A stretch of DNA of 64,000 nucleotides. Source: Macrostomum lignano. Taxonomy: Eukaryota. The position numbers and the translations under genes were made by a program. The notes beneath the pieces were generated by a model, which saw only the letters and a program-made list of their open reading frames with translations, was not told where the DNA came from and searched no databases. The stretch is from contig NIVC01001815.1 in NCBI GenBank assembly GCA_002269645.1, forward strand, positions 1 through 64,000, written 5' to 3'. Positions 1 through 35,934 of the stretch are shown in pieces (positions within the stretch are counted from its first letter, which is position 1; each line of letters opens with the position of its first letter).

Positions 1-1
1 G

Positions 2-436
2 CGGCATCCGCAGCTGAAACGCGAACAGGTGAAACGATCCAAGCAGGTCTCGGGCACCAGGAATCCCTACTTCAACCAGCAGTTCGTGTTCGAAGTTGGC
101 GCTCGCGACATGCTGGAGACGTGCATCCTGCGCATCACTCTGGTGCACAAGACCGAGACCCTGCGGCTCAAGCGGCCCGTCGGCTCTCTGGAGCTGCACG
201 CAGGCGCCGACCCCGACAGCCTGCCGCTGCTGCACTGGCGCGAGCTGCTGCAGACGCCGAACCGGGCGGTGGCCCGCTGGCACAATCTGATCACACCGAG
301 GCCGAGGAGAGAAACCGCAAGATCAGGGAGAAGGAGGAGAAGCGCCGGCTGCAGGAGCTGCAGGAGGAGGCGGAGGCGGCGGCCGAGACCGCGGCGCCCT
401 CGGGAAATCGATGATGATTTTATTTTAAATCGATAA
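2..436 (+). CDS. Synaptotagmin-family protein, C-terminal C2B domain (last exon; 5' part lies outside the window)
   Basis: The frame is open from base 2. NPYFNQQFVFEV and HWRELLQTPNRAVARWHNL match the end of a synaptotagmin C2B domain (HW.DML..P..PIAQWH.L). Stop TAA at 434-436; AATAAA near 604. Confidence 0.75.
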   Translation, partial: RHPQLKREQVKRSKQVSGTRNPYFNQQFVFEVGARDMLETCILRITLVHKTETLRLKRPVGSLELHAGADPDSLPLLHWRELLQTPNRAVARWHNLITPRPRRETARSGRRRRSAGCRSCRRRRRRRPRPRRPREIDDDFILNR

Positions 437-1300
437 TAATTTTAGTCAACAGAAATTCGAAATTATATGCCGTTCCAGTACTGATCCGACCGCTGTTGAG
501 TATTTTGGATAAAGAAATCTGAATTTGGGGAACAAATTGCTTGCTCTATGCACTGTGTTTATTTTCTATCATACAGTACGCCTACATATATGAAATGCAT
601 AAAAATAAACGTGCTTATGCTTTTAAACAACTACTATCAATTCTATAGCTGAATTCACTGTGGACTCTAAACTCTTGGAAGTAGCAGAGCTGTTACGAAT
701 GAACTGGAAACCAAAACACGTCCGAGCAGTGTTGGTGAAACAGAATTTTAATAAGTAGTCCTTTATTTTTTAGGGTTTATTGATTTTCGCACAGTATTTT
801 TGCTGCATCCTTGTCTTAGCTGCTTTTGTCAACAATGACCCTGCCTTGTCATTGGCAGGTGCATGGGCAGGGTTAAGTTGCGGGTATGTAAAAATTAATC
901 AGTCGGGGGCACAGAGACTAAACTGGTTGAGGACTAAAGACTGTCTGGAGATGTTTTTGAGCTGATTTCGGAAAAATATGCTGCTTTAGGGAGTGAAGCT
1001 TCGGCTGGGAGTCTCCCAGCCGCCGGAGTCTGGTAGGCTGTCGTTGCTTAGAAAATTGATGAAGTCAGCGAGACGAGAAGTCAGCTCACGAGTTTGGGAA
1101 GCCTTCTCTGGAATGCGTCAGGATTAACTGTTTTTTTAAATATCCACTTCGATAATTATTTATATTGCACACTTCGGTAGTCTGCTCACGCGAGAAAACA
1201 GGCACCAAACCCCAATAGACCAGGGAGGAGGGCAGGGGGAGCCTTGCTCGCTGATTAGGCGCCCCCTGTTAATCATTTCACCTATTCCCCAGCAACTAAT

Positions 1301-1932
1301 TTGGTGCTGGCGCCCCTTGGTGCTGGCGCCCCTTGGTGCTGGCGCCCCTTGGTGCTGGCGCCCCTTGGTGCTGGCGCCCCTTGGTGCTGGCGCCCCTTGG
1401 TGCTGGCGCCCCTTGGTGCTGGCGCCCCTTGGTGCTGGCGCCCCTTGGTGCTAAAGCCCCTTGGTGCTGGCGCTCCTTGGTGCTGGCGCCCCTTGGTGCT
1501 AAAGCCCCTTGGTGCTAAAGCCCCTTGGTGCTAAAGCCCCTTGGTGCTAAAGCCCCTTGGTGCTAAAGCCCCTTGGTGCTAAAGCCCCTTGGTGCTAAAG
1601 CCCCTTGGTGCTAAAGCCCCTTGGTGCTAAAGCCCCTTGGTGCTAAAGCCCCTTGGTGCTAAAGCCCCTTGGTGCTAAAGCCCCTTGGTGCTAAAGCCCC
1701 TTGGTGCTAAAGCCCCTTGGTGCTAAAGCCCCTTGGTGCTAAAGCCCCTTGGTGCTAAAGCCCCTTGGTGCTAAAGCCCCTTGGTGCTAAAGCCCCTTGG
1801 TGCTAAAGCCCCTTGGTGCTAAAGCCCCTTGGTGCTAAAGCCCCTTGGTGCTAAAGCCCCTTGGTGCTAAAGCCCCTTGGTGCTGGCGCCCCTTGGTGCT
1901 AAAGCCCCTTGGTGCTAAAGCCCCTTGGTGCT
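1301..1932. repeat. 16-bp minisatellite with two variants, CCCCTTGGTGCT(GGCG/AAAG), ~39 copies
   Basis: Direct reading; the GGCG variant dominates the 5' part and the AAAG variant the 3' part. Confidence 0.95.
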
Positions 1933-2234
1933 CCCAAGATGGCGCCCCCTAGATGGCGCGCCTGCCATGATACTTTTGAGAGGTGGCGGCTCTTGGTACT
2001 GGCGCAAGACCCGGCCCTCAATTATAAAACCTGGCTACGCCCCTGCAATGGACCCCTCAGTCTCAATTTCTGATGATTTAATTGATTGATCCCCTCTACT
2101 TTGCTGGCATGATGTCTCTCTAATGCTCCGCATTTTGCCTCACTAATTTTTTGAAAATCATACTAATTGGAGATTGTTCTAAGGAAAACTTCAGGCTTCT
2201 TGCCTCCTCTTGCCAAACTGGGTCGCATTGTAAC

Positions 2235-4489
2235 TCACTCGGCCTTGACAGCCAGCGAAGCGCCAGTGGCAAACTGGTGCATCCGGAGGCGGCGTCGCAT
2301 CTCCGCCGGGTTGTGCAGCGCCTTCGTTAGCGGTGACGCTGCAGCGGCACTGCGCCGAAGGGGTCGTCGCCGACGTCGCCGTTGCTGGCAAGGCGCCGAT
2401 GCAGCCGCTTCTATCGGCGCCAGATCGATAGCCAGGGCGCGCATGTCTGCTCGAGTGAGACCGCGCGGCCCCGGCACCACAGGCGGCGCTGTGCCGCACA
2501 TCCGACGCTGATGTGCCGCGTAATTTGACGCGCAGTTGGCCAGCTCAGTCTGACCGGCCATGGCATTGATGAGGCGCCGATAGTTGGCGTCTGGTCCGTC
2601 CGAGTAGGCGGCAACTTCTCGGAGCTGACGCAGCAGCCGGCATCGGTCAGGTCTATTGTCAGAGTCGGCCAGAGCATCAACGAGGTCGAGGAGGCCTCCG
2701 CTGCCGCTTTTGCAGTCGCCTTTTGTGCAGGCAAGTTTCAAGAGACGGCGCAGCCGGCAAAGCTGCGGGCTGGACAGGCGCTCGGCTGGACACAGCGCGG
2801 GACAGCCAGTGCAGCGCACAGCCAGCGCCACAGCCCGGTCGCGCATAGTAACCAGCTCCGTCAGGCTGCTCAGCACCCACTCGAGGTCGTGGGCAACCGG
2901 CGGCGCGCGGCCTCCGCAGCCAGTCCGATAAAACTCGCGGCAGAGATCGCGCAAGTAAGCTGCCACACGCAACGCTTTGGCGTATCGGAGAGAGCCGCGA
3001 CGGTAGGCCGCAACGCTAGCCGCCAGGGTGGTAACCCGACGACTGTCGCTGCTGGTATTGTTGGGCGCTGGAGTTTGCAGCGTTGCGTCCGGGTCTGCGG
3101 CTGGGACAGCCGCCGGTACAGTTCGCTGGCAGCAGTTGTTGTTGTTAGTGCCGCTAGACTGGGCGGCTGTCGGCTGCCAGGTGCGCAGCGTCCACTGGTC
3201 CTGCGAAGCTTCCATGTCGGTGATGTTATCCCGAACGTTGCGATGCTGGTGCAGCTGCGAATTGTGCTTTGGCTGCTCCTGCGAGTCAGCGTTGTTTGCA
3301 TCATCGAGCCTGCGTTATTTGATCAGTTCGTTGCGCTACGTTAGGTTTGAGTTGATTTGATTTAATCTGGTTTACGTATAAATCCTCCCTAGATAAAAAT
3401 AAGCACTCGAGAATTGTTCAGGACATACGCAAATACGATTAATATTCTTAAAGTACTACTTAACACGTCTTTACGAGATAAAGACTAAAGTGCAAGTACG
3501 CAAGTTATGACTCACCCCAGGCTGTTTGGCAGTCGTTTTGGGAAGCTGATGCCACCGCTAGCTCCGCTGGCGCCGAAGCTCAGCATGCTGCAGCTGTTGT
3601 GTCGGTTGCCACTGTAATCATTATCGGCGTTTTCGTCGTAGCCTTCGCCGGAGAGCTCGCCCTCGCCCTCGCTACTCTTCTTAATGGACGTAACGATACC
3701 GCCGCACCTGCCGCAGGTGCCCGACTGCTGCCGTCGATTAGGTTGTCGACCTCGACCGCCCGGCTGTTTTTTCTGCTTTCCCTGCCGCCCTCTGTCTCTG
3801 CCATTGTCCACCGCGGCCATCTCGCCGAGCCGGTCCATGACCACATCCAGCATGTAACGGTCCACTGTGTCTTCACAGCGTGCACCGATGTGCTGCGCCC
3901 GCCACAGGGCGCGACTCTCGTTTTCCAGCTTGCGCCGCATCGGCGTCTGCAGCGCATTCGCCTGCTGAGCTGATGTCTTTGCTTGATCTGGCCGCCTCCG
4001 CGGGCGCCGGCTGGTCCGGTTGGCCCGGATGCTGTCCACCAGATCGGTCAGGAACCTGTCGGCTTCGGCTAATCGCCGCTGGTTCCTCGGAGCCAAGCTG
4101 AGCCCCAGCATCATGTTGTTCAGGGAGAACTCCAGCTTATCAAGCGACTTCTGGCACTTTGCCAATCGTTCAACTTGATCCTCGCTGCACTGGCTACCCT
4201 CGCCGCCTGAAAAACCAGCTGGTCCTTCGGAACTGTCATGGTCGATCTCCGTATTGTTCCAGCTTAAATCATGGTACTGAAGCTTCTTCTCCTGCTGCTT
4301 CTGCTGCTGTTGGTACTTCTGCTGATGCAGGCCAGCATCAGGCGACATCGACAGGGGCCGTGTCTGCTGCTGCATCGGCGGCTCCGGCGGATGCAGCGGT
4401 GACCAATCGTCTGGACTGACGGTGGCGAGCGAAGCGCCGCGACTTCGCTGGCGGAACAGCATCCGCCTGAGCGGCCGCTTGCTCGGCAT
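2235..4489 (-). CDS. Uncharacterised ~682-aa protein; predicted exons 4489-3516 and 3309-2235
   Basis: Two long same-strand ORFs join in frame via a GTGAGT donor at 3515 and a CAG acceptor at 3312-3310 (GG+G codon, then LDDANNADSQ...). No family recognised. Confidence 0.6.
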
Positions 4490-5411
4490 CTCTGCTGCTG
4501 GCGTTACCAAATCTTCCTGCCGTCTCTCAAGTAGCGAGAGCGAGTTGACCAAATGCCTTATAGTTAACCAAAAATTTGTTCATGCCTTAGTTCGCGCATA
4601 TAAATTTCCCTATCTGCCTTTCCCAGAAGACGCAAGTACCATAGACACTCGAGATGAATAATGAATAATTTATCAAAAACCTGCTACTTGATTGAACAAA
4701 TTTAACCGTAAAAACAGCGCATCAGCTTTGCATTTTTTCTGCGTTTGCTTTTTCGTCCCGGTGGTGTTTACAAGCAGAAGAGACTAGCTAATACGAGTAC
4801 ATGCGTACGAGTGGGTAACTTTCCTAAGCCTGTATATCCGTTTAGTTGATGGATGCAACCACAATTTTGGTTAGCCAACTGCAAATATTTAAGTAAATCC
4901 AACACAGCTGTAAGACTAATTCTTCTATTCGCTAATCCAATGAACGGAAAGAATATGAAATATGAATAATACCTTTATACCAGAACAAATACGGAAAGTC
5001 TTGCCGCAGTCTAGGACTACTTTGGGCATGAAATTTCACCGAAACTCAAGTTTATTCCAGAGTTCCCAAAAATTCGATCATTTTGACAGAAAACTCAAAT
5101 TTTGAGAATAATTTCATTTGAAATCGGATCATCCGCACACCTGGCGCATTCGCGCCTGTCCCTGAAGTTGCCTGGGAAAGGCTGCCCAGCTTTGTGTAAA
5201 TGCCCGTCGACAACTGGCACTTAAGAAGTGTTAATGCGGATGCGATTAGTGGAAATAATCCTTTGAAAGCGCAGTGCTTGGGCAGCAAAGTATTTGCGTC
5301 AAAGTAGCTGGACCGTCAGAAAACCTATAAATTAATCGATATTTTAGTCGAATATCTCCCTAGCTGACTGTTGTAGCAACAAACTGGTTACCATATTCAG
5401 ACAACTAAAGC

Positions 5412-7298
5412 ATGCGCTACAGCCTAGCTCTGAGCGCCGCTGTTCTGGCGACACTGTCGCTTGCGGTTGGCGCTGCAATCAACTTAGCCGAGTGCTTTGC
5501 CAAGGACCGGGACGCCTGCATCAACTGCGTAGTGCAGTTTAGCAACGAGAGGTACGACGAATTCTGCAAGGCCTCGCCAACCAGCAGCATGTGCGGCAAC
5601 GATGCTGGAAAAACCAACTACGTCAGCAACATTCAGAGATCCGCAAGTAACGGCTGCCCAGCTGCAGCAGCGATAGAGAAGGCAGCACAAGCAGCAGAAA
5701 CTACAACCGAAGCTCCGACAACTACCGAATCTCCAACAACTACGACCCAAGCTCTGACAACTACGACCCAAGCTGCGACAACTACGACCCAAGCTGCGAT
5801 AACTACGACCCAAGCTGCGATAACTACGACCGAAGCTCCAACAACTACAACCAAAGCTCCAACAACTACAACCGAAGCTCCAACAACTACAACCAAAGCT
5901 CCGACAACTACAACCGAAGCTCCAACAACTACAACCCAAGCTCCAACAACTACAACCAAAGCTCCGACAACTACAACCAAAGCTCCAACAACTACAACCG
6001 AAGCTCCAACAACTACAACCGAAGCTCCGACAACTACAACCAAAGCTCCAACAACTACAACCGAAGCTCCGACAACTACAACCAAAGCTCCAACAACTAC
6101 AACCAAAGCCCTGACAACTACAACCGAAGCTCCGACAACTACAACCAAAGCTCCAACAACTACAACCGAAGCTCCGACAACTACAACCAAAGCTCCAACA
6201 ACTACAACCGAAGCTCCGACAACTACAACCAAAGCTCCAACAACTACAACCAAAGCCCTGACAACTACAACCGAAGCTCCGACAACTACAACCGAAGCTC
6301 CAACAACTACAACCGAAGCTCCGACAACTACAACCAAAGCTCCAACAACTACAACCGAAGCTCCAACAACTACAACCGAAGCTTCGACAACTACAACCAA
6401 AGCTCCGACAACTACAACCAAAGCTCCAAAAACTACAACCGAAGCTCCAACAACTACAACAAAAGCCCTGACAACTACAACCGAAGCTCCGACAACTACA
6501 ACCGAAGCTCCGACAACTACAACCGAAGCTCCAACAACTACAATCGAAGCTCCAACAACTACAACCAAAGCTCCAACAACTACAACCGAAGCTCCGACAA
6601 CTAAAACCGAAGCTCCGACAACTACAACCAAAGCTCCAACAACTACAACCAAAGCTCCAACAACTACAACCAAAGCTACGACAACTACAACCGAAGCTCC
6701 CACAACTACTACTGAAGCGACGACAACAAAGCGTCCAGGACATTGTCGTGGACATGGTCATGGACATTGCCATGGACACGGTCATGGTCACGGTCATGGA
6801 AACGGTCACGGTCATGGACACGGTCATGGTCATGGACATGGTCATGGTCATGGACACGGTCACAGTCATGGCGATGATAATGACGAAGATGACAAGGACA
6901 AAGGAGGCAAGGGTAAAGGAGACAAAGGCAAGGGAAGTAAGGGCAAAGCAGGCAAGGACAGAGATGATAAGAACAGGGGTAAAAGAAGAGGATACGACAG
7001 AAGTTGGGTTGATGATGACAGTGACAGAGGCGACTGGCAAAAGCGTAGAGGCGGCTGGAGAAAGCGTAGAGGCGGCTGGAGAAAGCGTAGAGGCGGCTGG
7101 CAAAAGCGTAGAGGCGGCTGGCAAAAGCGTAGAGGCGGCTGGCAAAAGCGTAGAGGCGGCTGGAGAAAGCGTAGAGGCGGCTGGCAAAAGCGTAGAGGCG
7201 GCTGGAGAAAGCGTAGAGGTGGCTGGCAAAAGCGTAGAGGCGGCTGGAGAAAGCTTAGAGGCAGCTGGAGAAAGCGTAGCGGCAGGGGAGGCCGGTGA
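5412..7298 (+). CDS. Secreted mucin-like protein: signal peptide, 6-Cys domain, TTTT[EK]AP repeats, His-Gly block, D/K/G linker, GGW[QR]KRR repeats
   Basis: Single 628-aa ORF with a hydrophobic N-terminus (MRYSLALSAAVLATLSLAVGA); both repeat blocks have a 21-bp unit that preserves the frame. Confidence 0.85.
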   Translation: MRYSLALSAAVLATLSLAVGAAINLAECFAKDRDACINCVVQFSNERYDEFCKASPTSSMCGNDAGKTNYVSNIQRSASNGCPAAAAIEKAAQAAETTTEAPTTTESPTTTTQALTTTTQAATTTTQAAITTTQAAITTTEAPTTTTKAPTTTTEAPTTTTKAPTTTTEAPTTTTQAPTTTTKAPTTTTKAPTTTTEAPTTTTEAPTTTTKAPTTTTEAPTTTTKAPTTTTKALTTTTEAPTTTTKAPTTTTEAPTTTTKAPTTTTEAPTTTTKAPTTTTKALTTTTEAPTTTTEAPTTTTEAPTTTTKAPTTTTEAPTTTTEASTTTTKAPTTTTKAPKTTTEAPTTTTKALTTTTEAPTTTTEAPTTTTEAPTTTIEAPTTTTKAPTTTTEAPTTKTEAPTTTTKAPTTTTKAPTTTTKATTTTTEAPTTTTEATTTKRPGHCRGHGHGHCHGHGHGHGHGNGHGHGHGHGHGHGHGHGHGHSHGDDNDEDDKDKGGKGKGDKGKGSKGKAGKDRDDKNRGKRRGYDRSWVDDDSDRGDWQKRRGGWRKRRGGWRKRRGGWQKRRGGWQKRRGGWQKRRGGWRKRRGGWQKRRGGWRKRRGGWQKRRGGWRKLRGSWRKRSGRGGR

Positions 7299-8242
7299 GG
7301 TTAAAGCTGAAATCAAGAATTGACAGCTGATGCACTCACTCAATCAATGAGGTTGAGAAATTTTGCTATTGACAGGACATAACTTGGTGGTGGTAAATGC
7401 TTTATCTTGATTGAGAACTAGAACAGTAGCAAAATCGAACTTTAAAATAGACGGTTTAAAATAATCGGCTGAACGGAATAATCTACTCCGTTGATTTTGC
7501 TATAGCTTTCAAACACTTTCTATTTTTACATTAGTGTATAACTATAAGTTTACTCAATAAGATTAGCATACAGATCCGTTAATATCTGCTCATTGGTTGG
7601 GTCAATGAGGAGGCAGTAAACGAACAATGATACACTAATGCAACTATGGGCATATAAGGGTAAAAGCAAGAGATAAGTTGTAAAACCTCGTAGAATCAGC
7701 CACAAACAAGGACCGTCGAAGTTTAAAGTCGCATTAGACAGATGGCAGCGAAGTTAGCTCTTAGTACACTATGCTTTTAGTACACTTGCAGGGTTACAGG
7801 TACGCTAGACAGGGGCAAAAGCAAATGAAGTGCAACACAACATCCAGTCTACACATATCATGCTGCTGAACTTTCGCTGTACGAATATTAGACAAAATGG
7901 ATTTCAAACAGCATTGCACAAGCACATCAAAGAGGAACCACAAGAGCTGGGCAAGCTCTACTGCTTCCATGCTTCCATGCGTCTCCATTAAGCAGAGCCG
8001 TAATGATGATCAGACAAAATACACGAAAGACTAGTTCCATCATGATCATGCATTATATATGGCTTCTAAAATTCTGAATAGATACGCTCGTAGCATATCT
8101 ATAAATAGCAAGCTTGGAAAATCCTACAATCAATCACGGTAAAGAAAAAATGGAAAAAAGTTGGAAAGGTTATAGAAAAGTGCCGACAGCCATGCAACTA
8201 GATCTTAGGGTGGAATCTTGCCCTTGTTGGCCGCTTTGCATG

Positions 8243-9034
8243 CTAGCAGCATTTGCCACCGCCGGCGCCTGAAGCTCCGTCTACGTCATCCTCGCCAACA
8301 ATGATGCCGGCGTTTCGGCCAGAGGAACGTCGACCAGCTGACGTTGCGCCCTCAGACCTTGACGTGGACGACCTAGACGAGGAGCCTGGGTTGGACGCCT
8401 CCTCGGCGTCGCGACGAGCCAGCATGTCGGCTGTCAGGCGAGCGAACGCCTCTTCTACGCCGCGGTTCAGCTTAGCGGATGTGCCGCAGTGCTTGGCGCC
8501 GACCGAGCTGGCGAATTCCTCGGCATTCGCTAGCGGTACATGACGATCGCGTTCGAGGTCAATCTGTAGGGAGACAGTTTTACCAAATAGCAATACGAAC
8601 TGCAAACTGCTACCAAACAAAGACCGGTACAAATTATCTATCGTGGGGATAATATGCCCTCCCCGCAGTGTTCGCACCTTATTGCCAACTAGGTACAGTG
8701 TGACATCGTTGCCGCGAATCTTGCGCAGCTCCTTGACCCAGTTGCGCGCCTTCTCGAACGAATCCTCGTCAGTGATGTCGTAAACTAGAATAGCGCCGTC
8801 ACTATCCCGATAGTAGATTGGACCGAGGGCGTGAAAGCGCTCCTGCCCGGCCGTGTCCCAGATGTTCAGCGTCACCCGTCGGCCGGAGACGTTAAGTTTC
8901 TTAGAAAGGAACGAGGCCTGCACTGTGGTTAAGTGTTTGTCATTGAACTTATCCTCGACGTAGCGCAGCGCCAAAGAAGTTTTGCCGACACAGCCCTCGC
9001 CCAAGAGGACAATTTTAAATTCTCTGTTGGACAT
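8243..9034 (-). CDS. RAB21: Rab21 small GTPase; exons 9034-8678 and 8563-8243 (225 aa)
   Basis: G1 GEGCVGKT, G3 WDTAGQERFHALGPIYYR (Rab21-type), G4 NK/ID split by a 114-nt GT-AG intron, G5 TSAK, C-terminal CC prenylation motif. Confidence 0.92.
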   Translation of the reverse strand: MSNREFKIVLLGEGCVGKTSLALRYVEDKFNDKHLTTVQASFLSKKLNVSGRRVTLNIWDTAGQERFHALGPIYYRDSDGAILVYDITDEDSFEKARNWVKELRKIRGNDVTLYLVGNKVRTLRGGHIIPTIDNLYRSLFGSSLQFVLLFGKTVSLQIDLERDRHVPLANAEEFASSVGAKHCGTSAKLNRGVEEAFARLTADMLARRDAEEASNPGSSSRSSTSRSEGATSAGRRSSGRNAGIIVGEDDVDGASGAGGGKCC

Positions 9035-11470
9035 TACTGCAACAGTTTTTTCAATCAAATTAGCAAATAACTGTGCTTTTTAGCCGGGTAAAAAATAATT
9101 AGAGAAAGCGAAAAGATAAAAACATACAAGGGGGGCCGAGATTTGAGGTGGTGGCGTGAGGAGGTCCGCTCTGTATTCTAATTATTAAGCTTGTGCGCGG
9201 TGCGCACAGAGCTTGGTCTTCTCGTCCCCAACTCCCTGCACCAGCTCTGGTTGGTGTGTCTGTATTTCTGCACACAAATTTTAGCGTCAGGCTTCAAGGC
9301 CTCGAACACAAGCCCTCCTCCCGCTCCAGTGCCAGCCCCGCCACTTCTACTAGGACCTGCGACCCGTTTTCAGATAAGCAAACCGGCCGCCCCTTTCTCT
9401 CCGCAAATCAATGTACATTGGTTCTAATTTAAATTTCTAGTGTACATTGGATCAAATGTACACTCGTCGCGACTCGTACACACTGAACGAACGCACGGAT
9501 CTCTTTTTCCCTTCACACAGTTTTACAAGCGTACGCTCGTATAAGGCTAGATTACGACTTTACGAGACGCGCGGCAATGAGTAAATGAATTTGTAATACC
9601 TTCAACACATACGCATCGTACCATGTAATATTTAACGGATCGAATGACAGCGTTATAAAATTGTTCCAATTATTGTTCCAATTGTTCCAATTGTTCCAAT
9701 GCAAGCCAGAAAGTAAAAAGGGGATTATTCACTAAGGAAACAAAAAACAATTCAGACTAAAGATTTTTTCGAGTTTATTTTGCTTGACACAGACTGGTTA
9801 TAAAAAACGTTCGACAACAATGCACTTTATATTTTTATTGAGACAATTTTTCAGCTTTTTAAACCGAGCTGTACTGATTGTTAGCGTTGTAAACAGCGAG
9901 CTGTTTTGCACTGATAAGATAGCGGACGTCATACATAGCGATTACGGTGCGTATTTTTGAGTCTGGATTTACCAGAGAAAAACAACAAAAAAGTTGCTGC
10001 AATTAGCGCGAAATACGAGTAAATACGAGTATTAAAACAATCAGCGTCAATAGTACATGCACTTCTTGTACATGAAGTATGGTACTAATGTTTATATAGT
10101 TAACGAACTCGCCAACCAACTGACAAGCATGCAACCAGCAGTGTTGTTCATCCATTTAAGACCTGCAGTAGGTCTTTGCTAAGTTCTCCATTTACTGTTT
10201 AAGAATGATACATTTATATAGTTAAGACACTATGGCGTCACAACAACGGAATGAGTTGCTGATCGGCGGGTTTCTTAAATAAAATTTAAATCTCAAATAA
10301 AGGAAGAAGTACATGTAAAACTAAGAAACAGTCGAAAGACCACAATGGTAATTAAAACAACTCAGTGTTAACCATGAGTAAAATTTGAGTCACCGATTTT
10401 TCCTAAGGTGCAATAAGCTATCCAAAGTCACGACTACTTAGCAAGCAGTAGCAGCAAGCATGGTCTTTCGACTGTTCAAGCCACGGTAGCAATTAAATAC
10501 TTGTAAAAAAGCAAATAACGAGCAAAACAATCCTGAAAAAAATTAAAGTATTGAGTGCCCCAAAAACAGTGAAGTAAATGATACGAGGAAATGGCATATT
10601 TTACTTTAATGAGCAAGCAATAAGCATAATTGATTTGAATTTATCAAAGACAAAAGCACAATGCACTACTTGACAGCGAAGAGTTTTCTTGAGTTAATTC
10701 GCGACGAAGCAGGTAAAAGCAAGATAATAAAATTGTAATTACAACAGTGCGAGATCGCACAAAATCGTTTTTAGAAGTCAATACTAGTTCAGCTTTTGAT
10801 TAAAACTGAAAACAGAAACTTCTCACACAATGGACCAGTCTGCTTGCATAATAAAACAAAATAATACAGTAAATGACGAGGTAATATTGAATTGCGCCAA
10901 AATACTACACACTTGACTTGCCTACTGAAAGTAGCAAATACATACAGGGTGAAAATAGTGAAAGCTATGTAATTTTATAAGAACAATTTTTTACCAAAAC
11001 TTTATAATATAGGAAGACGTAGACAACAAGATATTCTGTCTAGAATAGAATATAGCCTAGTGCTTTGTCCGTAAACTAATACGTACTAATACGGAGTATC
11101 AATACTAAAAAACTTGATTCACCGATCGAACTGAGTCAAGACAGATTGAACGAGTATTTATCTTAAGCTGCACTGTGAAAGAGAAAATGATAAATGGCGA
11201 GAAAGACGAGGCGATTATGACGACAGAATTAAGAAGTATAGTCTCTTTGAGATCTTAGTTGAATTTATTAGAAGACAACTGACACAAAAATTCAAACAAT
11301 CATAACAACAATAACGATAGCAACGGCCATACCACCCAAAACCCCCTGCTCTGGAAGCGCGGCTATCCCTCACCCGGATCGTTCAATGGATACATTGACA
11401 ACTTCCTGTATAGGCCAGTGATTGAGTAGGTTGAACATTTTGAAGAAAAATATCTAGCAGAATTGATGGA

Positions 11471-14400
11471 TCACACGTCCATTGTCTGGCCGCCAGCAGC
11501 TGGGCCTTGGCCCGATGCCGCCCCATCGGTGGGCCTCGACTCGCAGCAGCAGCAACGAGACGAGCAGACGCAGCAAGAGCAGTATTGAGCTGCCCGTTTC
11601 ATCAGCTTCTGGCGATGCTCCTGACGCTGATGTTGCCGATCTGACAGTTTCATCTTCTTGAGCCGCTTCAATCGCTGCACGCCGGGGTCTGACACAGTTG
11701 ACTTCAGCGGCGTTGACGGCTTAAAAGCTGCGACCGCATCTGCTGCTGCTGCTGCGTTGGCTTCGCCCTCAACTTCGACAATGTTGTCGAGACTGTGCAC
11801 GCTGTGTCTAACCAGCAGATTGTTCAGTGTGCGATTTTTCTTCATCCGGCCCTGGTAGACGTCTCTGTGCTCTTCGCTATAGCGGCCGAATATCACAACT
11901 AAAGCTCCGAATACGGCGAAAGCGGTAAGGCTGAGCAGGAACGAGCTGAGCTTCACGTACAGCGGGTAGCCGGTGTAGCGCGAATGGGTCCAGATGTCCT
12001 TAGACAGAAGGGTCTCGCCGTCTGGCGCAAAAGTCTGATTTCTGTACTCATAGTTAAGCGTGTGATTGTCGCTGCTGCAATCTACTAGTGCGAGTTCGGT
12101 CTCGTTGTGCACGGTGTAGATGGAGCCGTAAGGTCCGACGTATTGGCCGTATTCGCAGGGCGAGTAGATCATCTGATAAACGGGTTGAGTATTGGTATGA
12201 TTAGCAGAGTGAAGAAGAGCATGCTTGCAAAAATTAAAAATAGCTTGCTGGCAAAAGCTTTGGGGTTTGTCAAGCTTGGTGTTTGTGAAGTATAGGGCTT
12301 GTCAAGCTTGGTGTTTGTGAAGTTTAGGGCTTGTCAAGCTTGGTGTTTGTGAAGTATAGGGCTTGTCAAGCTTGGTGTTTGTGAAGTATAGGGCTTGTCA
12401 AGCTTGGTGTTTGTGAAGTTTAGGGCTTGTCAAGCTTGGTGTTTGTGAAGTTTAGGGCTTGTCAAGCTTGGTGTTTGTGAAGTTTAGGGCTTGTCAAGCT
12501 TGGTGTTTGTGAAGTTTAGGGCTTGTCAAGCTTGGTGTTTGTGAAGTATAGGGCTTGTCAAGCTTGGTGTTTGTGAAGTATAGGGCTTGTCAAGCTTGGT
12601 GTTTGTGAAGTTTAGGGCTTGTCAAGCTTGGTGTTTGTGAAGTTTAGGGCTTGTCAAGCTTGGTGTTTGTGAAGTATAGGGCTTGTCAAGCTTGGTGTTT
12701 GTGAAGTTTAGGGCTTGTCAAGCTTGGTGTTTGTGAAGTTTAGGGCTTGTCAAGCTTGGTGTTTGTGAAGTATAGGGCTTGTCAAGCTTGGTGTTTGTGA
12801 AGTTTAGGGCTTGTCAAGCTTGGTGTTTGTGAAGTATAGGGCTTGTCAAGCTTGGTGTTTGTGAAGTTTAGGGCTTGTCAAGCTTGGTGTTTGTGAAGTT
12901 TAGGGCTTGTCAAGCTTGGTGTTTGTGAAGTTTAGGGCTTGTCAAGCTTGGTGTTTGTGAAGTTTAGGGCTTGTCAAGCTTGGTGTTTGTGAAGTATAGG
13001 GCTTGTCAAGCTTGGTGTTTGTGAAGTATAGGGCTTGTCAAGCTTGGTGTTTGTGAAGTTTAGGGCTTGTCAAGCTTGGTGTTTGTGAAGTATAGAGCTT
13101 GTCAAGCTTGGTGTTTGTGAAGTATAGGGCTTGTCAAGCTTGGTGTTTGTGAAGTTTAGGGCTTGTCAAGCTTGGTGTTTGTGAAGTATAGAGCTTGTCA
13201 AGCTTGGTGTTTGTGAAGTATAGGGCTTGTCAAGCTTGGTGTTTGTGAAGTTTAGGGCTTGTCAAGCTTGGTGTTTGTGAAGTTTAGGGCTTGTCAAGCT
13301 TGGTGTTTGTGAAGTATAGGGCTTGTCAAGCTTGGTGTTTGTGAAGTATAGGGCTTGTCAAGCTTGGTGTTTGTGAAGTTTAGGGCTTGTCAAGCTTGGT
13401 GTTTGTGAAGTTTAGGGCTTGTCGAGCTTGTGCACGTAGAAATAGGAGATTTCGGCTACGCATTTCCAACCCCTTAATCTAATTATTCTTCTAAACCCCA
13501 AAACCTGACTAACCTGATTCTTCCACATGTTCAAATCCAGACACATAACTACGAACAGTACTCCATAGTTGAACCATTTCCCGGTGATATGCACCGTCCA
13601 AACGTCGTCGTCGACAATCCGTTTAAACCAGTCCGGTATGCGGATATCGAACGCGTAGATAGCCTTGGCTACGCCGGGCAGCCGAACGTCAAGGCTGTTA
13701 GTGAAGTTAGGAAAGTCCCAATCCTGCATGACAATCAGCAGGTCAAGGCTCAGAATTGATGCAGCTAAGAAAGCCCGCGACAGTTCGTTTGACGGAGCAA
13801 AGCCCCTGTTGAGGTAGTCCCAGCGGATGATGTCGGTGCAGATCACTGTGATAACGGTGGTGCACAAGCTGATTAGCAGCAGCCAGAACATGACGATCCG
13901 AGTGTAGCCAGAGCGCCACCACTGCCGGATGAAGCGGTTCCAGCTTGGATAAAGACGCTCCTGCAGCATCATGTCGCTCACCATCCAGGCGGTCATGAAG
14001 TCGCCAAGCCAGGTGCCTGTGGCTGCCATCTTCATGAACGTGGAGTTCTTGATGCCCATCTGCATACTGATGAGATAGGGGATGTTGGACGTGCCGCCGA
14101 GGGTCAGCAGGAAAGCGTTGTAAATGTTGGAGAAAATGTACACGGATATGATGGTTGAGAACCACATTGTCATCCAGGAGCCTTCGTCGTTAGCAAACAT
14201 TTTCAGCCGAAACCAACGGTCTGAAAGTTGTAGGTTTGTACAATTCTTGTTTAATACATTGGATATTTTTAGCCACCCAGCGAATTTGCCGATGATTCTG
14301 CCACTTCACCTAAACAATTTAAACAAATAAGCAAAGAGTTTGACTTAAGACAGTCTCACTGAACACAAATACGTGACACAGTTTTCCAGCGATGATGCCA

Positions 14401-15470
14401 ACCAGGATTCCCAGCAGCCACATGATCACTTTGAGCAGACTCCATGCGTTGGGCGGATACCGGCTGAAAACGAATGCGAACACGTTGCCTAACACGGGGA
14501 TGCTGCACACCTGCGACGAGTCGGCTATGGGATCCTCGGCGTAGATTAGGAAGTTAAGAAAAACGACTAGTAAAGTGCAGATCATGCGCAGGTAGGGATG
14601 CTGAAAGTAGAACCTAGCATCGTGCACCATGTACAGCGAGTACTGGCTAAGCCGATCAATGTCTACGGGGTCAATGGTCGAGCTGAACGAGCCAGGCCGG
14701 TTCAGACAGGACGGCGTGTGCAAGTGCCGAGCCGATGGCGAGCCCTGGGACCCATCGGCGCCGGTCGTCACCGGTGCCTGCGACCTGGATGATGACACAA
14801 CCGAAGAAGAGTCATCGTTTTCAAAGATGTCCTTGTTATCGTTGGCGTTGTCGTCCTTGGTAGCCGACGTTGTTGATGGCTCAGCCACCTCCGTCTGTGT
14901 CTGTGACTCCGGTCCCGGCGCCGCGCTGTCCTTAATGCCTTCAACGGAGTCGTCACCGACGGATGTCAATCTTCCACTGGCCTCGGCATCGTCGGCTGTT
15001 GCGGCGGCAGAAGCTGCCATTGCAGCAGCCGCAGCAGCCGCCTGAGCAGTCGATGGTACCGACATTTGGCGCCTGTGCCGCGCCGGAGGCCCACGCCGCC
15101 CGAGTTCGAAGACGACTCCACTTTCACCAGTGCCACCGCCGCTGCTGCCATTGCCACCGTCAGCGATGTCAGACAGCTGGCGCATCAACGAACGCCGTCT
15201 GTACGATGTGGACTGATGTTCTTGGTGCTGCGCCAGTGCCTGTTGTTGCCTAGGCAACCTCTGCCCCGGCGTTGGGCTGCAAACTGCCGAGTTGGGCGCG
15301 GTTGGCCCAGTCCGCTTCTCACGCACCTTTAGCCGGCCGGCGTCGCGCCATTTGATTGACATCCGCCTAACCAACTCACGGTCGCTCAAGCTGGTTGCTA
15401 GGTCGACCATCTCAGCTGGCGGCTGCGGCTGCGTTGGCTCCGCGGAAGCCGCATGCTGCTGAGCAGCCAT
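11471..15470 (-). CDS. TMEM117: Transmembrane protein 117 homologue; exons 15470-14360, 14220-13514 and 12172-11471 (839 aa)
   Basis: Motifs RFYFQHPYLRM, AEDP, GSWMTMWFST, GTWLGDFMTAWMVSDMMLQ, DLLIVMQDWDFP, HITGKWFNYG, DLNMWKNQ and EYGQYVGP match TMEM117 as I recall it. Canonical splice sites restore one frame (2520 nt). Confidence 0.92.
12262..13429. repeat. 32-bp minisatellite AGGGCTTGTCAAGCTTGGTGTTTGTGAAGT(A/T)T, ~36 copies, in TMEM117 intron 2
   Basis: Direct reading; the period is 32 (GTCAAGCTT at 12301 and 12333). Confidence 0.95.
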
Positions 15471-24338: not shown

Positions 24339-26403
24339 ATGGCTGCACTGCTGAATGCCAAGTCCTGGGTGAGGCTGCTCGCCCTGCTGCTGGCCGCCTG
24401 CCACCTGTGCGAGCTCTGCTTTGTTGCCAACTGCCCACCTGGTGGCAAGAAGCGAAGCTTTCCCGGTGAGTGAAACTAGTGAGTGAAACTAGTGAGTGAA
24501 ACTAGGAAGTGAAACTAGTGAGTAGAACTAGTGAGTGAAACTAGTGAGTGAGTGAAACTAGTGAGTGAAACTAGTGAGTGAAACTAGTGAGTGAAACTAG
24601 TGAGTGAAACTAGTGAGTGAAACTAGTGAGTGAAACTAGTGAGTGAATCTAGTATATGAAACTAGTGAGTGAAACTAGTGAATCTAGTGAGTGAAATTAG
24701 TGAGTGAATCTAGTATATGAAACTAGTGAGTGAAACTAGTGAAACTAGTGAGTGAAACTAGTGAGTGAATCTAGTATATGAAACTAGTGAGTGAAACTAG
24801 TGAATCTAGTGAGTGAAATTAGTGAGTGAGTGAAACTAGTGAGTGAATCTAGTAAATGAAACTAGTGAGTGAATCTAGTGAGTGAGTGAAACTAGTGAGT
24901 GAATCTAGTGAGTGAGTGAAACTAGTGAGTGAATCTAGTGAGTGAGTGAAGCTAGTGAGTGAAACTAGTAAGAGCTAATTTGTACAAACTGTCAAGCTAA
25001 ACAAAAGCGTTGAAGTTCTGGTGCTTTGTCTTTCTTGCCCTCCGTGATACAGAAGAGTGAAAATGAAATTAATTAGCCAGTGAATATCCCAGACAGCAGT
25101 CAAACATTCTCGCCCTCAATCCCAGTCTGCTTGAATCCACATCAGGTGGAAATCACGGTTGCCTCATTCAAGCCTTAGCAGCCATTAATTTGATCGGGTT
25201 TCTTTCTCTCCGCAAGGGTTGAAAGTGTCGTGACCTCGTGTGGCAGGTGAAAATTTTTCCGATAGCTCGTGTAACTACAGAGCAATGATCAAACTTGATG
25301 ACAAAAGATAGGCGCTGACGAATGCTTACAATTGCGCGGGCAGAGAAGTTCAGTGCTAGACGCGTCCGATTTTTGCGCCACGACACCTGGTTATGTGCTC
25401 AAACACATTCATTTGAGGCTTGTGTGCGCGAAACTTGGCCTTGGGGATGTCGTGCGATCAACACTCATGAGGGCCAGCTTCCAGGGCACAAACAGTGTAC
25501 ATGCCTGACGATTAGAAAGTCAGGGCCGCTGTACACCCTGTGTGAGCGTGTGTGCCTGCGTACAGTATTGACGCGTTCAGGAGTCAGCGGAATGAGCAGA
25601 ATGTGGGAGGATGCGACGGTGAACCATAGCCCCCAAGTAAACTCCGAAACAACATTGAAAAGTCGCGCCACCCTTTGCCCCAGTGAGCAGTGTCTTTCGA
25701 CCAGCATCTTTCACCTGGCCAACCATTCTGATATTAATGCTTGAAAAAAAGTGAAAACCGGGTGGAAGCTTCAATCCATCCAATCTTCGTCCTTCGCTCT
25801 TCCCAATCCCTCGTCACTCAAAAGTCAATACCGAGCTAGAAGTTACTCCACACTCTCAAAGGTGGCGACTTTTTAATGCTGTGGAGTATACTCATTGGTA
25901 GACAAACAACTGTACACGCACGAATTTCACTCGCACGACAGGCAAGCAGTTGAGCGCCTGCAAACCATCCTGCGGATCCGGCAAAGGCGTCTGCCTCGGT
26001 CGCAGCCTCTGCTGCGGCAACTTCGGCTGCATCGTGGGAAATGCGGCCAGGAAGGACTGCGCGGGAGCCGACGAGATGCGCGCCTTTCTCGGCCGGCTGA
26101 CTTGTCGGCGCAGTCTGCCGCGGTGCACTTTGGAGCGCGGCGGCCGCTGCTCCGCTCCTGGCGTCTGCTGCGACCTTGGTGCGTTGATAACCGGGGCTGA
26201 GTGCCGTGTGCACTGGCTTTGGTTTTGTTCGTGATTAGTCTTAGTCCATTTCGCAAACTGTCATTGCACATTGCTCAGTAGTTTATACACAGCCCGAAGT
26301 CCTCTGAATAGTCTACGTTGGTTAAACAATTGCAGACTCGTGTCGCGCAGCCAAGGAGTGCAACGAATTCCGCTGGGGCAGGTCTACAGACGGTTCCGCT
26401 TGA
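24339..26403 (+). CDS. Vasopressin/oxytocin-family preprohormone (signal peptide, CFVANCPPG-GKKR, neurophysin); exons 24339-24465, 25942-26178 and 26336-26403 (143 aa)
   Basis: Nonapeptide C-x4-C-P-x-G at 24417-24443 followed by GKKR. The spliced exons give a neurophysin with all 14 Cys (CKPSCGSGKGVCLGRSLCCGNFGC...GRCSAPGVCCDLDSCRAAKEC). All splice sites are GT-AG and in phase; AATAAA at 26466. Confidence 0.95.
24466..24970 (+). repeat. 13-bp minisatellite GTGAGTGAAACTA (~35-38 units) starting exactly at the intron-1 donor of the VP/OT-like gene
   Basis: Direct reading; the first unit is the 5' splice site itself. Confidence 0.92.
25340..25600 (+). mobile_element. Diverged SINE copy in VP/OT-like intron 1
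   Basis: AGTGTACATGCCT..GGCCGCTGTACAC..GTGTGCCTGCGTAC..GCGGAATG is collinear with the SINE body. Confidence 0.65.
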
Positions 26404-26672
26404 GCGATGATGAAGGCTGCCGTTCGAACTTTAAAGCTGCTGGAGGATTGTTTTTTACTGTCCTTAATAAAACCAATGGCTTAATTCGAACAAATAATAA
26501 TTTGCCAATCATCAACTCGATCTGTCAGGCCTAATAAATAAAACCAAATTGATGTCACCTCCATGACTGACTGGCCATTGCCAGCGATTCCAGCAGATAA
26601 AGGCTGTTGATATTCAGCTGTTTTGGGTTTCTTTACAATGTTTGCTCATTGATATATCCATACTTACAGGGG

Positions 26673-27733
<1,061 letters not shown>

Positions 27734-32832: not shown

Positions 32833-33321
32833 ATGAAATCAATAACGATCGTAAAGGAGCTTCTTTACTTTTTGATTCGCGGTAATTAATCTATGGAAAA
32901 TGGATGAAGTCACTCCTGGTAAAATTTCAATAAACTTTTTCCTAATCCTGTCTCTCACTGAGCACGGGCTGGGGGCGTTTTATTGAGCTGTGAGTACGTT
33001 GAAGCAGTAGCAGAAAATTTTGTACCTTTTATTAGGTCACAAATTATAGTGATAGTGCGAGCATATTGTAGCTAAACTTAAACAGGCTAGCTAAAGCATA
33101 TCAATGTTCTGCAGAAATAACGTTCTGCTTCTACTTCAACAGCGAAGCAGTTCTCGAGCGTATGAATGAAATTAACATGCACAGAATACTACTAGACAGT
33201 AGATTTGGAGGTCAGGACGCGAATTCAAATAGCGGAATTAACCCTACTCCAGCTCGTCTTCGTTCAGCGTCCAAGGCCGCGACTCCATCAGCTGACCGTC
33301 CAGCAGAGTCTCCACCAGGTA

Positions 33322-33357
<36 letters not shown>

Positions 33358-33831
33358 CCCGGAGGGTGCCGCTAAATCGACGGTCTTGAAATTTTTGCCA
33401 CCGCTAGGCGGAAGCTCGGGGTTGCCGCGAGTCGCCGTCGTGTCCGATTGCAGTCTCTGCGCGGAGATTTATTTTTACATTATTCAGTTGCACATTCAAA
33501 CTTGACTACTTGTTAGTAGAAAAGTTCGAAAGTAGACACTGAATTTTTATTGCTCTTATTATGACTTTATGTTTGCCACACCTGATGCAGAGCTCGGATG
33601 TTGACGGCGTGTCGCTTCTTTGAAGCCGCGTCGCCAGCCGCGACTGAGGCGGCCCCGGCCGGCAGCTTGCCTGTGCCCGTCAGCACGACGCTGCGCATCC
33701 TGCGGGATCCGGGGGGAGCGGGCGGCCCAGTGGCAGGTGATTCGCTAGATTGCTCATCCAAAGATGTCTAATTAGGCTTCGGTTCAATGAGGTTTAATGG
33801 TCGATTTTATAAGGATCAACAAAGCGGCTTC

Positions 33832-35934
<2,103 letters not shown>

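What the first reader, a model, noticed from the sequence alone, without database searches (positions are those of the whole stretch)
24339..26403. Complete vasopressin/oxytocin-type gene encoding an unusual nonapeptide, CFVANCPPG-amide
Seen: a 26-aa signal peptide directly followed by CFVANCPPG, then G-K-K-R rather than the usual GKR, then a 14-Cys neurophysin with no copeptin. Exons 1 and 3 are too short for the ORF track. Intron 2 is phase 1, two codons after the CC motif (GVCCDL/D), matching the vertebrate AVP/OXT position (GVCCND/E) as I recall it. The loop between Cys7 and Cys8 is about 5 aa longer than in mammals. Established: relatives include conopressin CFIRNCPKG and annetocin CFVRNCPTG, so Ala4 and Pro8 make this peptide neutral and atypical. 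The family was long thought lost in flatworms and has since been reported in free-living marine species as platytocin; I cannot verify whether this exact peptide is described.
Basis: partly seen in the sequence, partly recalled or inferred. Interest (0 to 1): 0.85.

Follow-up and report, generated by a model that had tools for sequence, protein, structure and literature searches.

The report
Macrostomum vasopressin/oxytocin-type gene, already catalogued
This is a real, intact vasopressin/oxytocin-type hormone gene of the flatworm Macrostomum lignano, but the same protein is already in GenBank and was listed as such in a 2022 paper, so only details of its peptide and carrier protein are new.

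Summary
There are three exons: 24339-24465, 25942-26178 and 26336-26403. They encode 143 aa: a 26-aa leader, CFVANCPPG, GKKR and a 14-Cys neurophysin (Pfam PF00184, E 1.8e-14) with no copeptin.

The window is Macrostomum lignano assembly Mlig_3_7, contig NIVC01001815.1. The protein is 100% identical to PAA50340.1, annotated only as "hypothetical protein". Kobayashi et al. 2022, the platytocin paper, names that accession as an M. lignano VP/vasotocin precursor. The gene's identity is therefore already known, although the peptide string appears in no searchable paper.

Most of the claimed oddities are ordinary:
- Pro8 occurs in 16 of 58 relatives.
- Platytocin is CFIRNCPPG followed by GKKR.
- CF(I/V)RNCPPG is widespread in spiralians.
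- Only Ala4 is unique (0 of 58).

Intron 2 (phase 1, two codons after CC) is conserved in a mammal, a nemertean and a tardigrade, tested here.

- Leu at -1 of the presumed signal-peptide cleavage site.
- Loss of the near-invariant neurophysin Glu that salt-bridges the hormone's N-terminus.
- A shifted intron 1.

All three are shared with a second, divergent M. lignano gene (CFINNCPPG). They leave the true mature N-terminus open. Interest is low to moderate.

Novelty: the reader's own refutation clause applies. The identical precursor, PAA50340.1, is in GenBank and is listed as an M. lignano VP/vasotocin precursor in Kobayashi et al. 2022 (PMC8896804). UniRef names a sibling copy 'Oxytocin'.

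The residue at -1 is Leu, which no relative outside M. lignano has.

The parts
24339..24465 (+). Exon 1 (127 nt). It encodes the leader, the nonapeptide, GKKR and the first 3.3 codons of the neurophysin N-terminus (SFP-G). It ends in phase 1 at donor GTGAGT.
   Evidence: Identical to the annotated CDS of PAA50340.1.
24339..24416 (+). Presumed 26-aa signal peptide, MAALLNAKSWVRLLALLLAACHLCEL. The junction to Cys1 has Cys at -3 and Leu at -1.
   Evidence: translation; among the relatives sampled, -1 is A 36, S 8, G 8, T 3, plus one Cys from a mis-parsed bryozoan entry (P0040). Leu occurs only in the two M. lignano genes. No signal-peptide predictor was available.
24417..24443 (+). Nonapeptide CFVANCPPG, with Cys1, Cys6, Asn5, Pro7 and Gly9 conserved.
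   Evidence: Identical in all four assembled copies.
24444..24455 (+). Gly amidation donor plus the Lys-Lys-Arg prohormone-convertase site.
   Evidence: The same GKKR follows platytocin in S. pusilla and N. humilis.
24466..25941 (+). Intron 1 (1476 nt, phase 1). Its first 504 nt (24466-24969) are a 13-bp minisatellite, GTGAGTGAAACTA x38, and the first unit supplies the splice donor.
   Evidence: The array length differs between copies.
25942..26178 (+). Exon 2 (237 nt): the neurophysin core from Cys1 to the Cys11-Cys12 pair. It includes the extended Cys7-Cys8 loop CAGADEMRAFLGRLTC.
26179..26335 (+). Intron 2 (157 nt, phase 1), two codons after the CC motif. This is the position conserved across Bilateria.
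   Evidence: same position and phase in the M. lignano paralogue, a mammalian AVP gene, Tubulanus and Hypsibius.
26336..26403 (+). Exon 3: neurophysin Cys13 and Cys14, a 13-residue tail and stop TGA. No copeptin.
26466..26538 (+). Two AATAAA poly(A) signals (26466 and 26533), 63 and 130 nt after the stop codon.
   Evidence: pattern match only.

Best explanation
This is gene Mlig003431.g1 of Macrostomum lignano, a vasopressin/oxytocin-type (platytocin-type) neuropeptide precursor.

Shown here: the gene structure, the family membership of the neurophysin domain, identity to GenBank PAA50340.1, and conservation of the peptide in all four assembled copies.

Inferred from the family's established biosynthesis:
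- The leader targets the precursor to the ER.
- The neurophysin folds with seven disulfides, and the hormone forms its Cys1-Cys6 bridge.
- In secretory granules a prohormone convertase cuts after Lys-Lys-Arg.
- A carboxypeptidase trims the basic residues.
- Peptidylglycine alpha-amidating monooxygenase converts the Gly into a C-terminal amide.
- The product is cyclic CFVANCPPG-NH2 ([M+H]+ 904.380), which neurons release to act on a rhodopsin-type GPCR.

By analogy with platytocin in polyclads, the likely roles are water balance under hyperosmotic stress and reproduction or egg-laying.

The peptide is the widespread spiralian form CFVRNCPPG with Arg4 replaced by Ala. The least secure step is the exact N-terminus, because the required signal-peptidase site has Leu at -1.
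For: - Gene model and splice sites.
- Pfam PF00184 above the gathering score.
- PDB neurophysins by sequence and as the top 10 structural hits.
- 100% identity to PAA50340.1 and PAA63765.1. The window equals contig NIVC01001815.1 of GCA_002269645.1.
- GenBank models of this assembly derive from a genome-guided RNA-seq transcriptome (PMC5730564), so the annotated 3-exon CDS is indirect evidence of a spliced transcript.
- Kobayashi 2022 lists this accession as a VP/vasotocin precursor and gives platytocin's functions (PMC8896804).
- Outside Macrostomum the closest relative is the S. pusilla platytocin precursor, CFIRNCPPG-GKKR-S.
- All 14 Cys, the GKKR/GKR site and Asn5, Pro7, Gly9 are retained in a second M. 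lignano gene that is only 44-48% identical. That argues for long-term constraint.
- The divergent g2 copy differs in the exons only by substitutions and one in-frame 3-bp deletion.
- In vasopressin the position-4 side chain is solvent-exposed, and a 5xAla hormone still folds with neurophysin (PMC5267430). Ala4 should therefore be compatible with processing.
Against: - Leu at -1 violates the small-residue rule for signal peptidase. No relative outside M. lignano has it. In human AVP an Ala(-1)Val change already impairs cleavage (reference titles in PMC3932059; PMC5267430).
- The neurophysin lacks the near-invariant Glu at Cys7+3, which is bovine Glu47, the salt-bridge partner of the hormone's amino group. 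It is present in 40 of 41 other relatives.
- Kobayashi 2022 found no clear VP/OT-receptor orthologue in M. lignano.
- No peptide, expression or receptor data could be examined here.
- The AlphaFold model is only moderate (pLDDT 75, pTM 0.37), and it is poor over the nonapeptide and the long loop.
Confidence: 0.85

Rival explanations
1. The gene is the same, but the mature hormone is not a nonapeptide. Signal peptidase cuts at a canonical site upstream (AAC|HLCEL or HLC|EL). With no basic site in between, the product is an N-terminally extended amide: ELCFVANCPPG-NH2 ([M+H]+ 1146.507, or 1128.497 if pyroglutamylated) or HLCELCFVANCPPG-NH2 (1499.659). The neurophysin pocket has co-evolved, which would explain the lost Glu and the longer loop.
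For: - Leu at -1 occurs only in the two M. lignano genes.
- Both genes offer aligned canonical sites upstream: AAC| and SLC|, and for the paralogue SLA|EL.
- Both genes have lost the Glu47 equivalent, which in other species pairs with the free amino group of Cys1 (for its role).
- The polyclad platytocin precursors keep both canonical features (VIS|C and TFA|C, with CAIEN and CALEN), so the two changes co-occur in one lineage.
Against: - In every characterised family member the hormone starts at Cys1.
- A free Cys1 amino group is needed for neurophysin binding and ER exit in vertebrates (PMC5267430).
- The c-region length (CHLCEL, 6 residues after the hydrophobic core) fits cleavage before Cys1.
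- The HLC... form would carry an odd third cysteine.
- This gene keeps Asp86-Glu87 next to the lost Glu position, and these might substitute for it.
- No signal-peptide predictor or peptide data were available.
Confidence: 0.22
2. The ligand gene is decaying or has lost its classical function after loss of the canonical receptor in the Macrostomum lineage. On this view the intact ORF merely reflects the youth of the duplicated copies.
For: - No clear receptor orthologue was reported in M. lignano.
- The conserved Glu is lost and the loop is lengthened.
- The g4 copy carries a +1/-1 frameshift pair that destroys two cysteines.
- Exon and intron divergence between copies do not differ significantly (4/432 against 24/1123, p = 0.14).
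Against: - Two genes that have diverged to 44-48% identity both keep all 14 Cys, the C-F-x-x-N-C-P-P-G core, the amidation and cleavage site, and intron 2. Neutral decay would not do that.
- Three of four copies are intact, and the one indel in g2 is in frame.
- The gene model comes from RNA-seq.
- The g4 frameshifts lie in G/C runs of a redundant PacBio contig and may be assembly errors.
Confidence: 0.06
3. The gene model is wrong at exon 1. The older WormBase ParaSite/UniProt model A0A1I8HIC0 uses a donor 24 nt upstream (CCTG|GTGGCA). It joins CFVANCPPG directly to KQLSAC, removing GKKRSFPG and with it the amidation and cleavage site.
For: That model is in UniRef (P0004). It keeps the reading frame.
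Against: - The GTGGCA donor is weak compared with GTGAGT.
- The RNA-seq-guided Mlig_3_7 models of all four copies use the downstream donor.
- The GKKR site is conserved with platytocin.
- An uncleavable hormone-neurophysin fusion has no precedent in the family.
Confidence: 0.03

Closest known systems
Platytocin precursor of the polyclads Stylochoplana pusilla (BCO16375.1) and Notocomplana humilis (Kobayashi et al. 2022, Sci Adv, PMC8896804)
   Same: - Flatworm VP/OT-type precursor.
- Peptide pattern C-F-x-x-N-C-P-P-G with Pro8.
- G-K-K-R processing site.
- 14-Cys neurophysin and no copeptin.
- It is the best hit outside Macrostomum (E 4e-11).
   Different: - The peptide is CFIRNCPPG against CFVANCPPG (I3V, R4A), so the only charged side chain is lost.
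- The precursors are only 35% identical.
- Platytocin has canonical signal-peptide junctions (Ser or Ala at -1), a 9-residue Cys7-Cys8 loop and the C-x-x-E motif. The M. lignano protein has Leu at -1, a 14-residue loop and Ala at the Glu column.
- Platytocin has a demonstrated receptor and physiology. M. lignano has neither.
Second M. lignano VP/OT-type gene, Mlig001406.g1 (PAA87831.1), encoding CFINNCPPG
   Same: - Same species and the closest relative overall (44-48% identity).
- Same 'E-L|C' junction.
- Same phase-1 intron 1 upstream of the first neurophysin Cys, and the same intron 2.
- Same loss of the conserved Glu.
- Shared motifs GVCLG, LCCGxFGCIV, CRRxLP and APGVCC.
   Different: - Ile3 and Asn4 instead of Val3 and Ala4.
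- GKR instead of GKKR.
- The Cys6-Cys7 loop is lengthened (16 residues) rather than Cys7-Cys8.
- There is no acidic residue at all in the Cys7-Cys8 loop.
- The genomic neighbourhood is different.
Spiralian CF(I/V)RNCPPG-amide peptides: Platynereis vasotocin CFVRNCPPG, scallop and oyster CFIRNCPPG, nemertean CFVRNCPPG
   Same: Eight of the nine residues match Platynereis CFVRNCPPG, and the precursor architecture is the same.
   Different: Arg4 is replaced by Ala. Position 4 in 58 relatives is T, Q, R, S, N, I or F and never Ala.
Vertebrate vasopressin/oxytocin-neurophysin genes
   Same: - Three-exon plan.
- Intron 2 in phase 1, two codons after the CC pair.
- 14 Cys.
- The hormone lies directly after the leader, followed by Gly and basic residues.
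   Different: - Intron 1 is phase 0 directly before the first neurophysin Cys in the mammal, nemertean and tardigrade. It is phase 1 and 17 nt further upstream here.
- No copeptin.
- Longer Cys7-Cys8 loop.
- The Glu47 equivalent is missing.

Membership tests
Vasopressin/oxytocin-neurophysin precursor family | Neurophysin domain (Pfam PF00184, Hormone_5) above the curated threshold | tested here: met
   E 1.8e-14 and 54.8 bits against a cut-off of 27.2, covering profile positions 2-79 of 79. PDB neurophysins score E 2.6e-7.
Vasopressin/oxytocin-neurophysin precursor family | Fourteen conserved cysteines in the neurophysin, with family-typical spacing | tested here: met
   There are 14 Cys, and all 14 columns are invariant in a 39-sequence alignment. 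Spacing is typical except Cys7-Cys8 (14 against 9) and Cys1-Cys2 (3 against 2).
Vasopressin/oxytocin-neurophysin precursor family | Peptide C-x-x-x-x-C-P-x-G with Asn5, followed by a Gly amidation donor and a di- or tribasic site | tested here: met
   CFVANCPPG followed by G-KKR. Position-wise comparison with 58 relatives.
Vasopressin/oxytocin-neurophysin precursor family | The hormone's Cys1 directly follows a signal peptide with a canonical cleavage site (small residue at -1) | tested here: inconclusive
   The architecture fits: a hydrophobic leader is directly followed by Cys1. However, -1 is Leu. Apart from one mis-parsed entry (P0040), every other relative has A, S, G or T at -1, and Leu occurs only in the two M. 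lignano genes. No signal-peptide predictor or peptide data were available.
Vasopressin/oxytocin-neurophysin precursor family | Conserved intron positions | tested here: met
   Intron 2 has the same position and phase in 5 of 5 genes from four phyla. Intron 1 is shifted by 17 nt and is phase 1 instead of phase 0, a shift shared by the M. lignano paralogue.
Vasopressin/oxytocin-neurophysin precursor family | Neurophysin Glu (bovine Glu47, motif C-x-x-E after Cys7) that salt-bridges the hormone's alpha-amino group | tested here: not met
   The aligned column is Ala85 here and Val in the paralogue. Glu is present in 40 of 41 other full-length relatives. Asp86-Glu87 follow and might substitute. The residue's role is taken from the title of Yuasa 1993.
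Vasopressin/oxytocin-neurophysin precursor family | Neurophysin three-dimensional fold | tested here: inconclusive
   The AlphaFold2 model has pLDDT 75 and pTM 0.37. The top 10 Foldseek PDB hits are all neurophysins at probability 0.87-1.00, but TM is only 0.3-0.4 and rmsd about 10 A.
Platytocin signalling system (flatworm VP/OT-type ligand plus receptor) | Cognate VP/OT-type GPCR present and activated by the peptide | not testable with these tools
   Kobayashi 2022 reports that no clear receptor orthologue was found in M. lignano. The M. lignano proteome could not be searched selectively here.
Platytocin signalling system (flatworm VP/OT-type ligand plus receptor) | Expression in neurosecretory neurons and presence of the processed amidated peptide | not testable with these tools
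   The evidence is indirect only: the GenBank model derives from RNA-seq assemblies.

The most novel reading that the evidence does not exclude
The Macrostomum lineage has remodelled the step that is otherwise invariant in this family, the docking of the hormone's free Cys1 amino group into neurophysin.

Both of its divergent VP/OT-type genes combine Leu at -1 of the leader with loss of the Glu47 salt-bridge residue and altered loops. They may therefore produce N-terminally extended amides (for example ELCFVANCPPG-NH2 and ELCFINNCPPG-NH2) or use a different docking mode.

They may also signal through a receptor too divergent to be recognised as a VP/OT receptor, which would fit the reported absence of a clear orthologue.
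Probability: 0.2. Interest if true: 0.55.

Novelty: already known. Interest (0 to 1): 0.25.

Why it matters
VP/OT signalling was described as lost in Platyhelminthes as late as 2020 (PMC7181382). The 2022 platytocin paper overturned that view and had already pointed to these M. lignano accessions, so the gene's existence adds nothing new.

What remains useful is practical. M. lignano is the one flatworm with routine transgenesis, and it carries two distinct VP/OT-type peptides, CFVANCPPG and CFINNCPPG, that nobody has characterised.

This analysis flags three lineage-specific departures: Leu at -1, loss of the Glu47 equivalent, and a shifted intron 1. These bear on how strictly hormone-neurophysin docking is conserved, and a single peptidomics experiment could resolve the question.

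Tried and rejected
- **Literature search for the peptide and gene IDs.** CFVANCPPG, CFINNCPPG, Mlig003431 and Mlig001406 gave no hits. The supplements of Thiel 2018 do not contain them. No supplements of Kobayashi 2022 are held.
- **P0005.** This 1035-aa repeat protein scored E 3e-18 in the HMMER search. The match is 15 repeats of a short CRRSLP-like stretch and is not a homologue.
- **Shared synteny between the two M. lignano VP/OT loci.** Both have a ~357-aa neighbour, but this was rejected: only 30 bp of coding sequence match.
- **Selection test among the four near-identical copies.** Too little divergence (p = 0.14).
- **Orthologues from other Macrostomum species.** None were found in the protein collections, so conservation of the E-L|C junction within the genus could not be tested.
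- **A wrong recollection of mine.** I recalled PDB 2HNW as a delta-E47 mutant. It is an F91STOP mutant.
- **Other checks.** Rfam found nothing in the window. There is no second gene copy in the window.
- **Receptor search in M. lignano.** Not attempted. The search tools cannot be restricted to one species, and its hits would be buried under those of other animals.
Full report
**Observation**

Reading the sequence and an exact spliced mapping give a single GT-AG solution:
- Exon 1, 24339-24465: donor GTGAGT, phase 1.
- Exon 2, 25942-26178: donor GTGCGT, phase 1.
- Exon 3, 26336-26403: stop TGA.

The 143-aa product is a 26-aa hydrophobic leader, then CFVANCPPG, then G-K-K-R, then a neurophysin with exactly 14 cysteines and a 13-residue tail without copeptin.

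Pfam Hormone_5 (PF00184) matches at E 1.8e-14 and 54.8 bits against a cut-off of 27.2. Bovine neurophysins match by sequence.

**Source and prior knowledge**

The protein is 100% identical to GenBank PAA50340.1 and PAA63765.1, 'hypothetical protein BOX15_Mlig003431g1/g3' of Macrostomum lignano. The window is the first 64 kb of contig NIVC01001815.1 of assembly GCA_002269645.1 (Mlig_3_7), in the same coordinates.

Kobayashi et al. 2022 (PMC8896804) named platytocin in polyclads. [quoted passage not shown] All four were recovered here. UniRef names one sibling 'Oxytocin'.

The gene's identity is therefore on record. The peptide string CFVANCPPG and the gene identifiers occur in no searchable paper.

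Wudarski et al. 2017 (PMC5730564) built the GenBank annotation of this assembly from a genome-guided RNA-seq transcriptome. The annotated three-exon CDS is therefore indirect evidence of a spliced transcript.

**Copies**

The assembly holds four near-identical copies, g1 to g4 (loci L001-L004). Exons are 97-100% identical and the nonapeptide is the same in all. This fits the known redundancy and hidden polyploidy of the sequenced line.
- g2 differs by two synonymous changes, two replacements and one in-frame 3-bp deletion. The replacements and the deletion all lie in loops.
- g4 has a +1/-1 frameshift pair in G/C runs. It replaces about 20 residues and removes two cysteines. This is either an assembly error or a decaying copy.
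- An older model (A0A1I8HIC0) uses a weak upstream donor that skips GKKRSFPG. I consider it wrong.

**How unusual is the peptide?**

An exhaustive HMMER scan of 1.84 billion representatives found 61 hits. I tabulated 58 nonapeptides.
- Position 8 is Pro in 16 of them, the commonest residue there. CFITNCPPG occurs in arthropods and CFVTNCPPG in tardigrades.
- Position 4 is T 25, Q 13, R 10, S 6, N 2, plus single I and F. It is never Ala.
- The best hit outside Macrostomum is the S. pusilla platytocin precursor BCO16375.1, which reads CFIRNCPPG-GKKR-S. N. humilis has the same peptide and GKKR.
- CF(I/V)RNCPPG recurs in Platynereis, nemerteans and many molluscs.

So Pro8, the lack of charged side chains and GKKR are ordinary for this part of the tree. 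The peptide is the spiralian form with Arg4 changed to Ala. In vasopressin the side chains at positions 3, 4, 5, 7 and 8 are solvent-exposed, and a hormone with all five changed to Ala still folds with neurophysin and is secreted (PMC5267430). Ala4 is therefore unlikely to disturb biosynthesis. Its effect on receptor binding is unknown.

**A second gene**

PAA87831.1 (Mlig001406.g1, locus L005) is a divergent paralogue, 44-48% identical, that encodes CFINNCPPG-GKR. It lies in an unrelated neighbourhood. M. lignano thus has two distinct VP/OT-type peptides. The main text of the 2022 paper does not discuss this.

**Gene structure, tested**

I mapped exact exon structures for five genes. Intron 2 is phase 1, two codons after the CC pair, in all five:
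- M. lignano g1: CCDL|D.
- The M. lignano paralogue: CCVG|E.
- A mammalian AVP gene: CCSD|E.
- The nemertean Tubulanus: CCDR|T.
- The tardigrade Hypsibius: CCTE|K.

Intron 1 behaves differently. It is phase 0 directly before the first neurophysin Cys in the mammal, nemertean and tardigrade. In both M. lignano genes it is phase 1 and lies upstream, by 17 nt and 5 nt respectively.

**Macrostomum-specific departures**

1. *The residue before Cys1 is Leu in both M. lignano genes (…CEL|C and …AEL|C).* The counts at -1 among the relatives sampled are A 36, S 8, G 8 and T 3, plus one Cys from a mis-parsed bryozoan entry. Both polyclad platytocins have Ser or Ala. In human AVP, an Ala(-1)Val change already impairs signal cleavage and causes diabetes insipidus. 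A free hormone N-terminus is required for insertion into the neurophysin pocket. Canonical sites exist a few residues upstream in both genes (AAC| and SLC|, and SLA|EL in the paralogue).
[quoted passage not shown] It is Ala here and Val in the paralogue. It is present in 40 of 41 other full-length relatives, including both platytocins. In this gene the Cys7-Cys8 loop has 14 residues instead of 9, with Asp-Glu just after the lost position. The paralogue's loop has no acidic residue.

Together these leave the mature N-terminus open. No signal-peptide predictor or peptide data were available to me.

**Structure**

An AlphaFold2 model from a 39-sequence alignment is moderate (pLDDT 75, pTM 0.37). 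The two cysteine-rich halves are confident (82-90). The long loop (55-67) and the nonapeptide (51-73) are poor. Foldseek returns only neurophysins as its top ten PDB hits, at probability 0.87-1.00, but with TM 0.3-0.4. This is local agreement only and adds little to the sequence evidence.

**Mechanism**

The most likely mechanism is the canonical pathway: ER entry, disulfide folding with neurophysin, cleavage after KKR, trimming, amidation, and release of cyclic CFVANCPPG-NH2 from neurons onto a GPCR. By analogy with platytocin, the likely roles are osmotic tolerance and reproduction. Only the gene, its family membership and its conservation are shown here. The processing, the site of expression, the receptor and the physiology are all inferred.

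The main rival, at about 0.2, is an N-terminally extended product with a co-evolved neurophysin pocket. Pseudogenisation is unlikely, because two genes at 44-48% identity keep all 14 Cys, the core peptide motif, the processing site and intron 2.

**Verdict**

The finding is real and correctly read, but it is already catalogued and cited. Most of the 'unusual' features are shared with platytocin or with spiralians in general. The residual interest lies in Ala4, the second peptide, and the Leu(-1), lost-Glu and shifted-intron trio. A single peptidomics experiment would settle the last of these, and the expected masses are given.

Noticed in passing
window 24466-24969: Intron 1 opens with a 13-bp minisatellite, GTGAGTGAAACTA x38. 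Every unit carries a consensus GTGAGT donor, and the first unit is the donor actually used. Read-through gives ...SFPGE* after two codons. The array length differs by 200-300 nt between the four gene copies.
   Followed up: partly
L005 3001-5406 (contig NIVC01000215.1): A second, divergent M. lignano VP/OT-type gene (PAA87831.1, Mlig001406.g1) encodes CFINNCPPG-GKR. It shares the E-L|C junction, the phase-1 intron 1 and the lost neurophysin Glu with the window gene.
   Followed up: yes
L004 10001-11710 (contig NIVC01004709.1), equivalent to window ~26081 and 26142: Copy g4 (PAA46766.1) has a +1 G and a -1 G, 61 nt apart in exon 2. About 20 residues are read out of frame and two cysteines are lost. 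This is either a PacBio assembly error or a decaying copy.
   Followed up: partly
window 24441/24442 (alternative donor CCTG|GTGGCA): The older UniProt/WormBase model A0A1I8HIC0, named 'Oxytocin', splices 24 nt earlier. It deletes GKKRSFPG, which is the amidation and cleavage site. It is probably a mis-prediction.
   Followed up: partly
window 26673-27523: A (CAGA)n microsatellite of about 213 units starts 270 nt after the stop codon, beyond both AATAAA signals. The window as a whole holds more than 20 strong tandem arrays (27 TRF rows with score >= 200, some describing the same array). This fits the repeat-rich M. lignano genome.
   Followed up: no
window 1-15470 (- strand) and 33244-35934 (- strand): The neighbours are a TMEM117-family gene upstream (839 aa, ending at about 15470) and an unannotated 357-aa gene downstream. 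TMEM117 also flanks copies g3 and g4. In the g2 locus the 356-aa neighbour lies about 5.4 kb closer, and no TMEM117 was called within 10 kb.
   Followed up: no
L007 501-66415 (Tubulanus polymorphus OZ123227.1): This nemertean has two VP/OT-type genes. One is canonical (CFVRNCPPG, P0091). The other encodes the odd CVIRTCPRA-GKR (Val2, Thr5, Ala9; P0026). The latter gene spans 66 kb, has an extra 5' intron, and has retrotransposon ORFs inside an intron.
   Followed up: no
P0005 (database protein, not in the window): A 1035-aa protein made of about 15 tandem repeats scored E 3e-18 against the precursor. The score comes only from a repeated CRRSLP...GRC stretch. It is a false positive of repeat-summed scoring.
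   Followed up: yes
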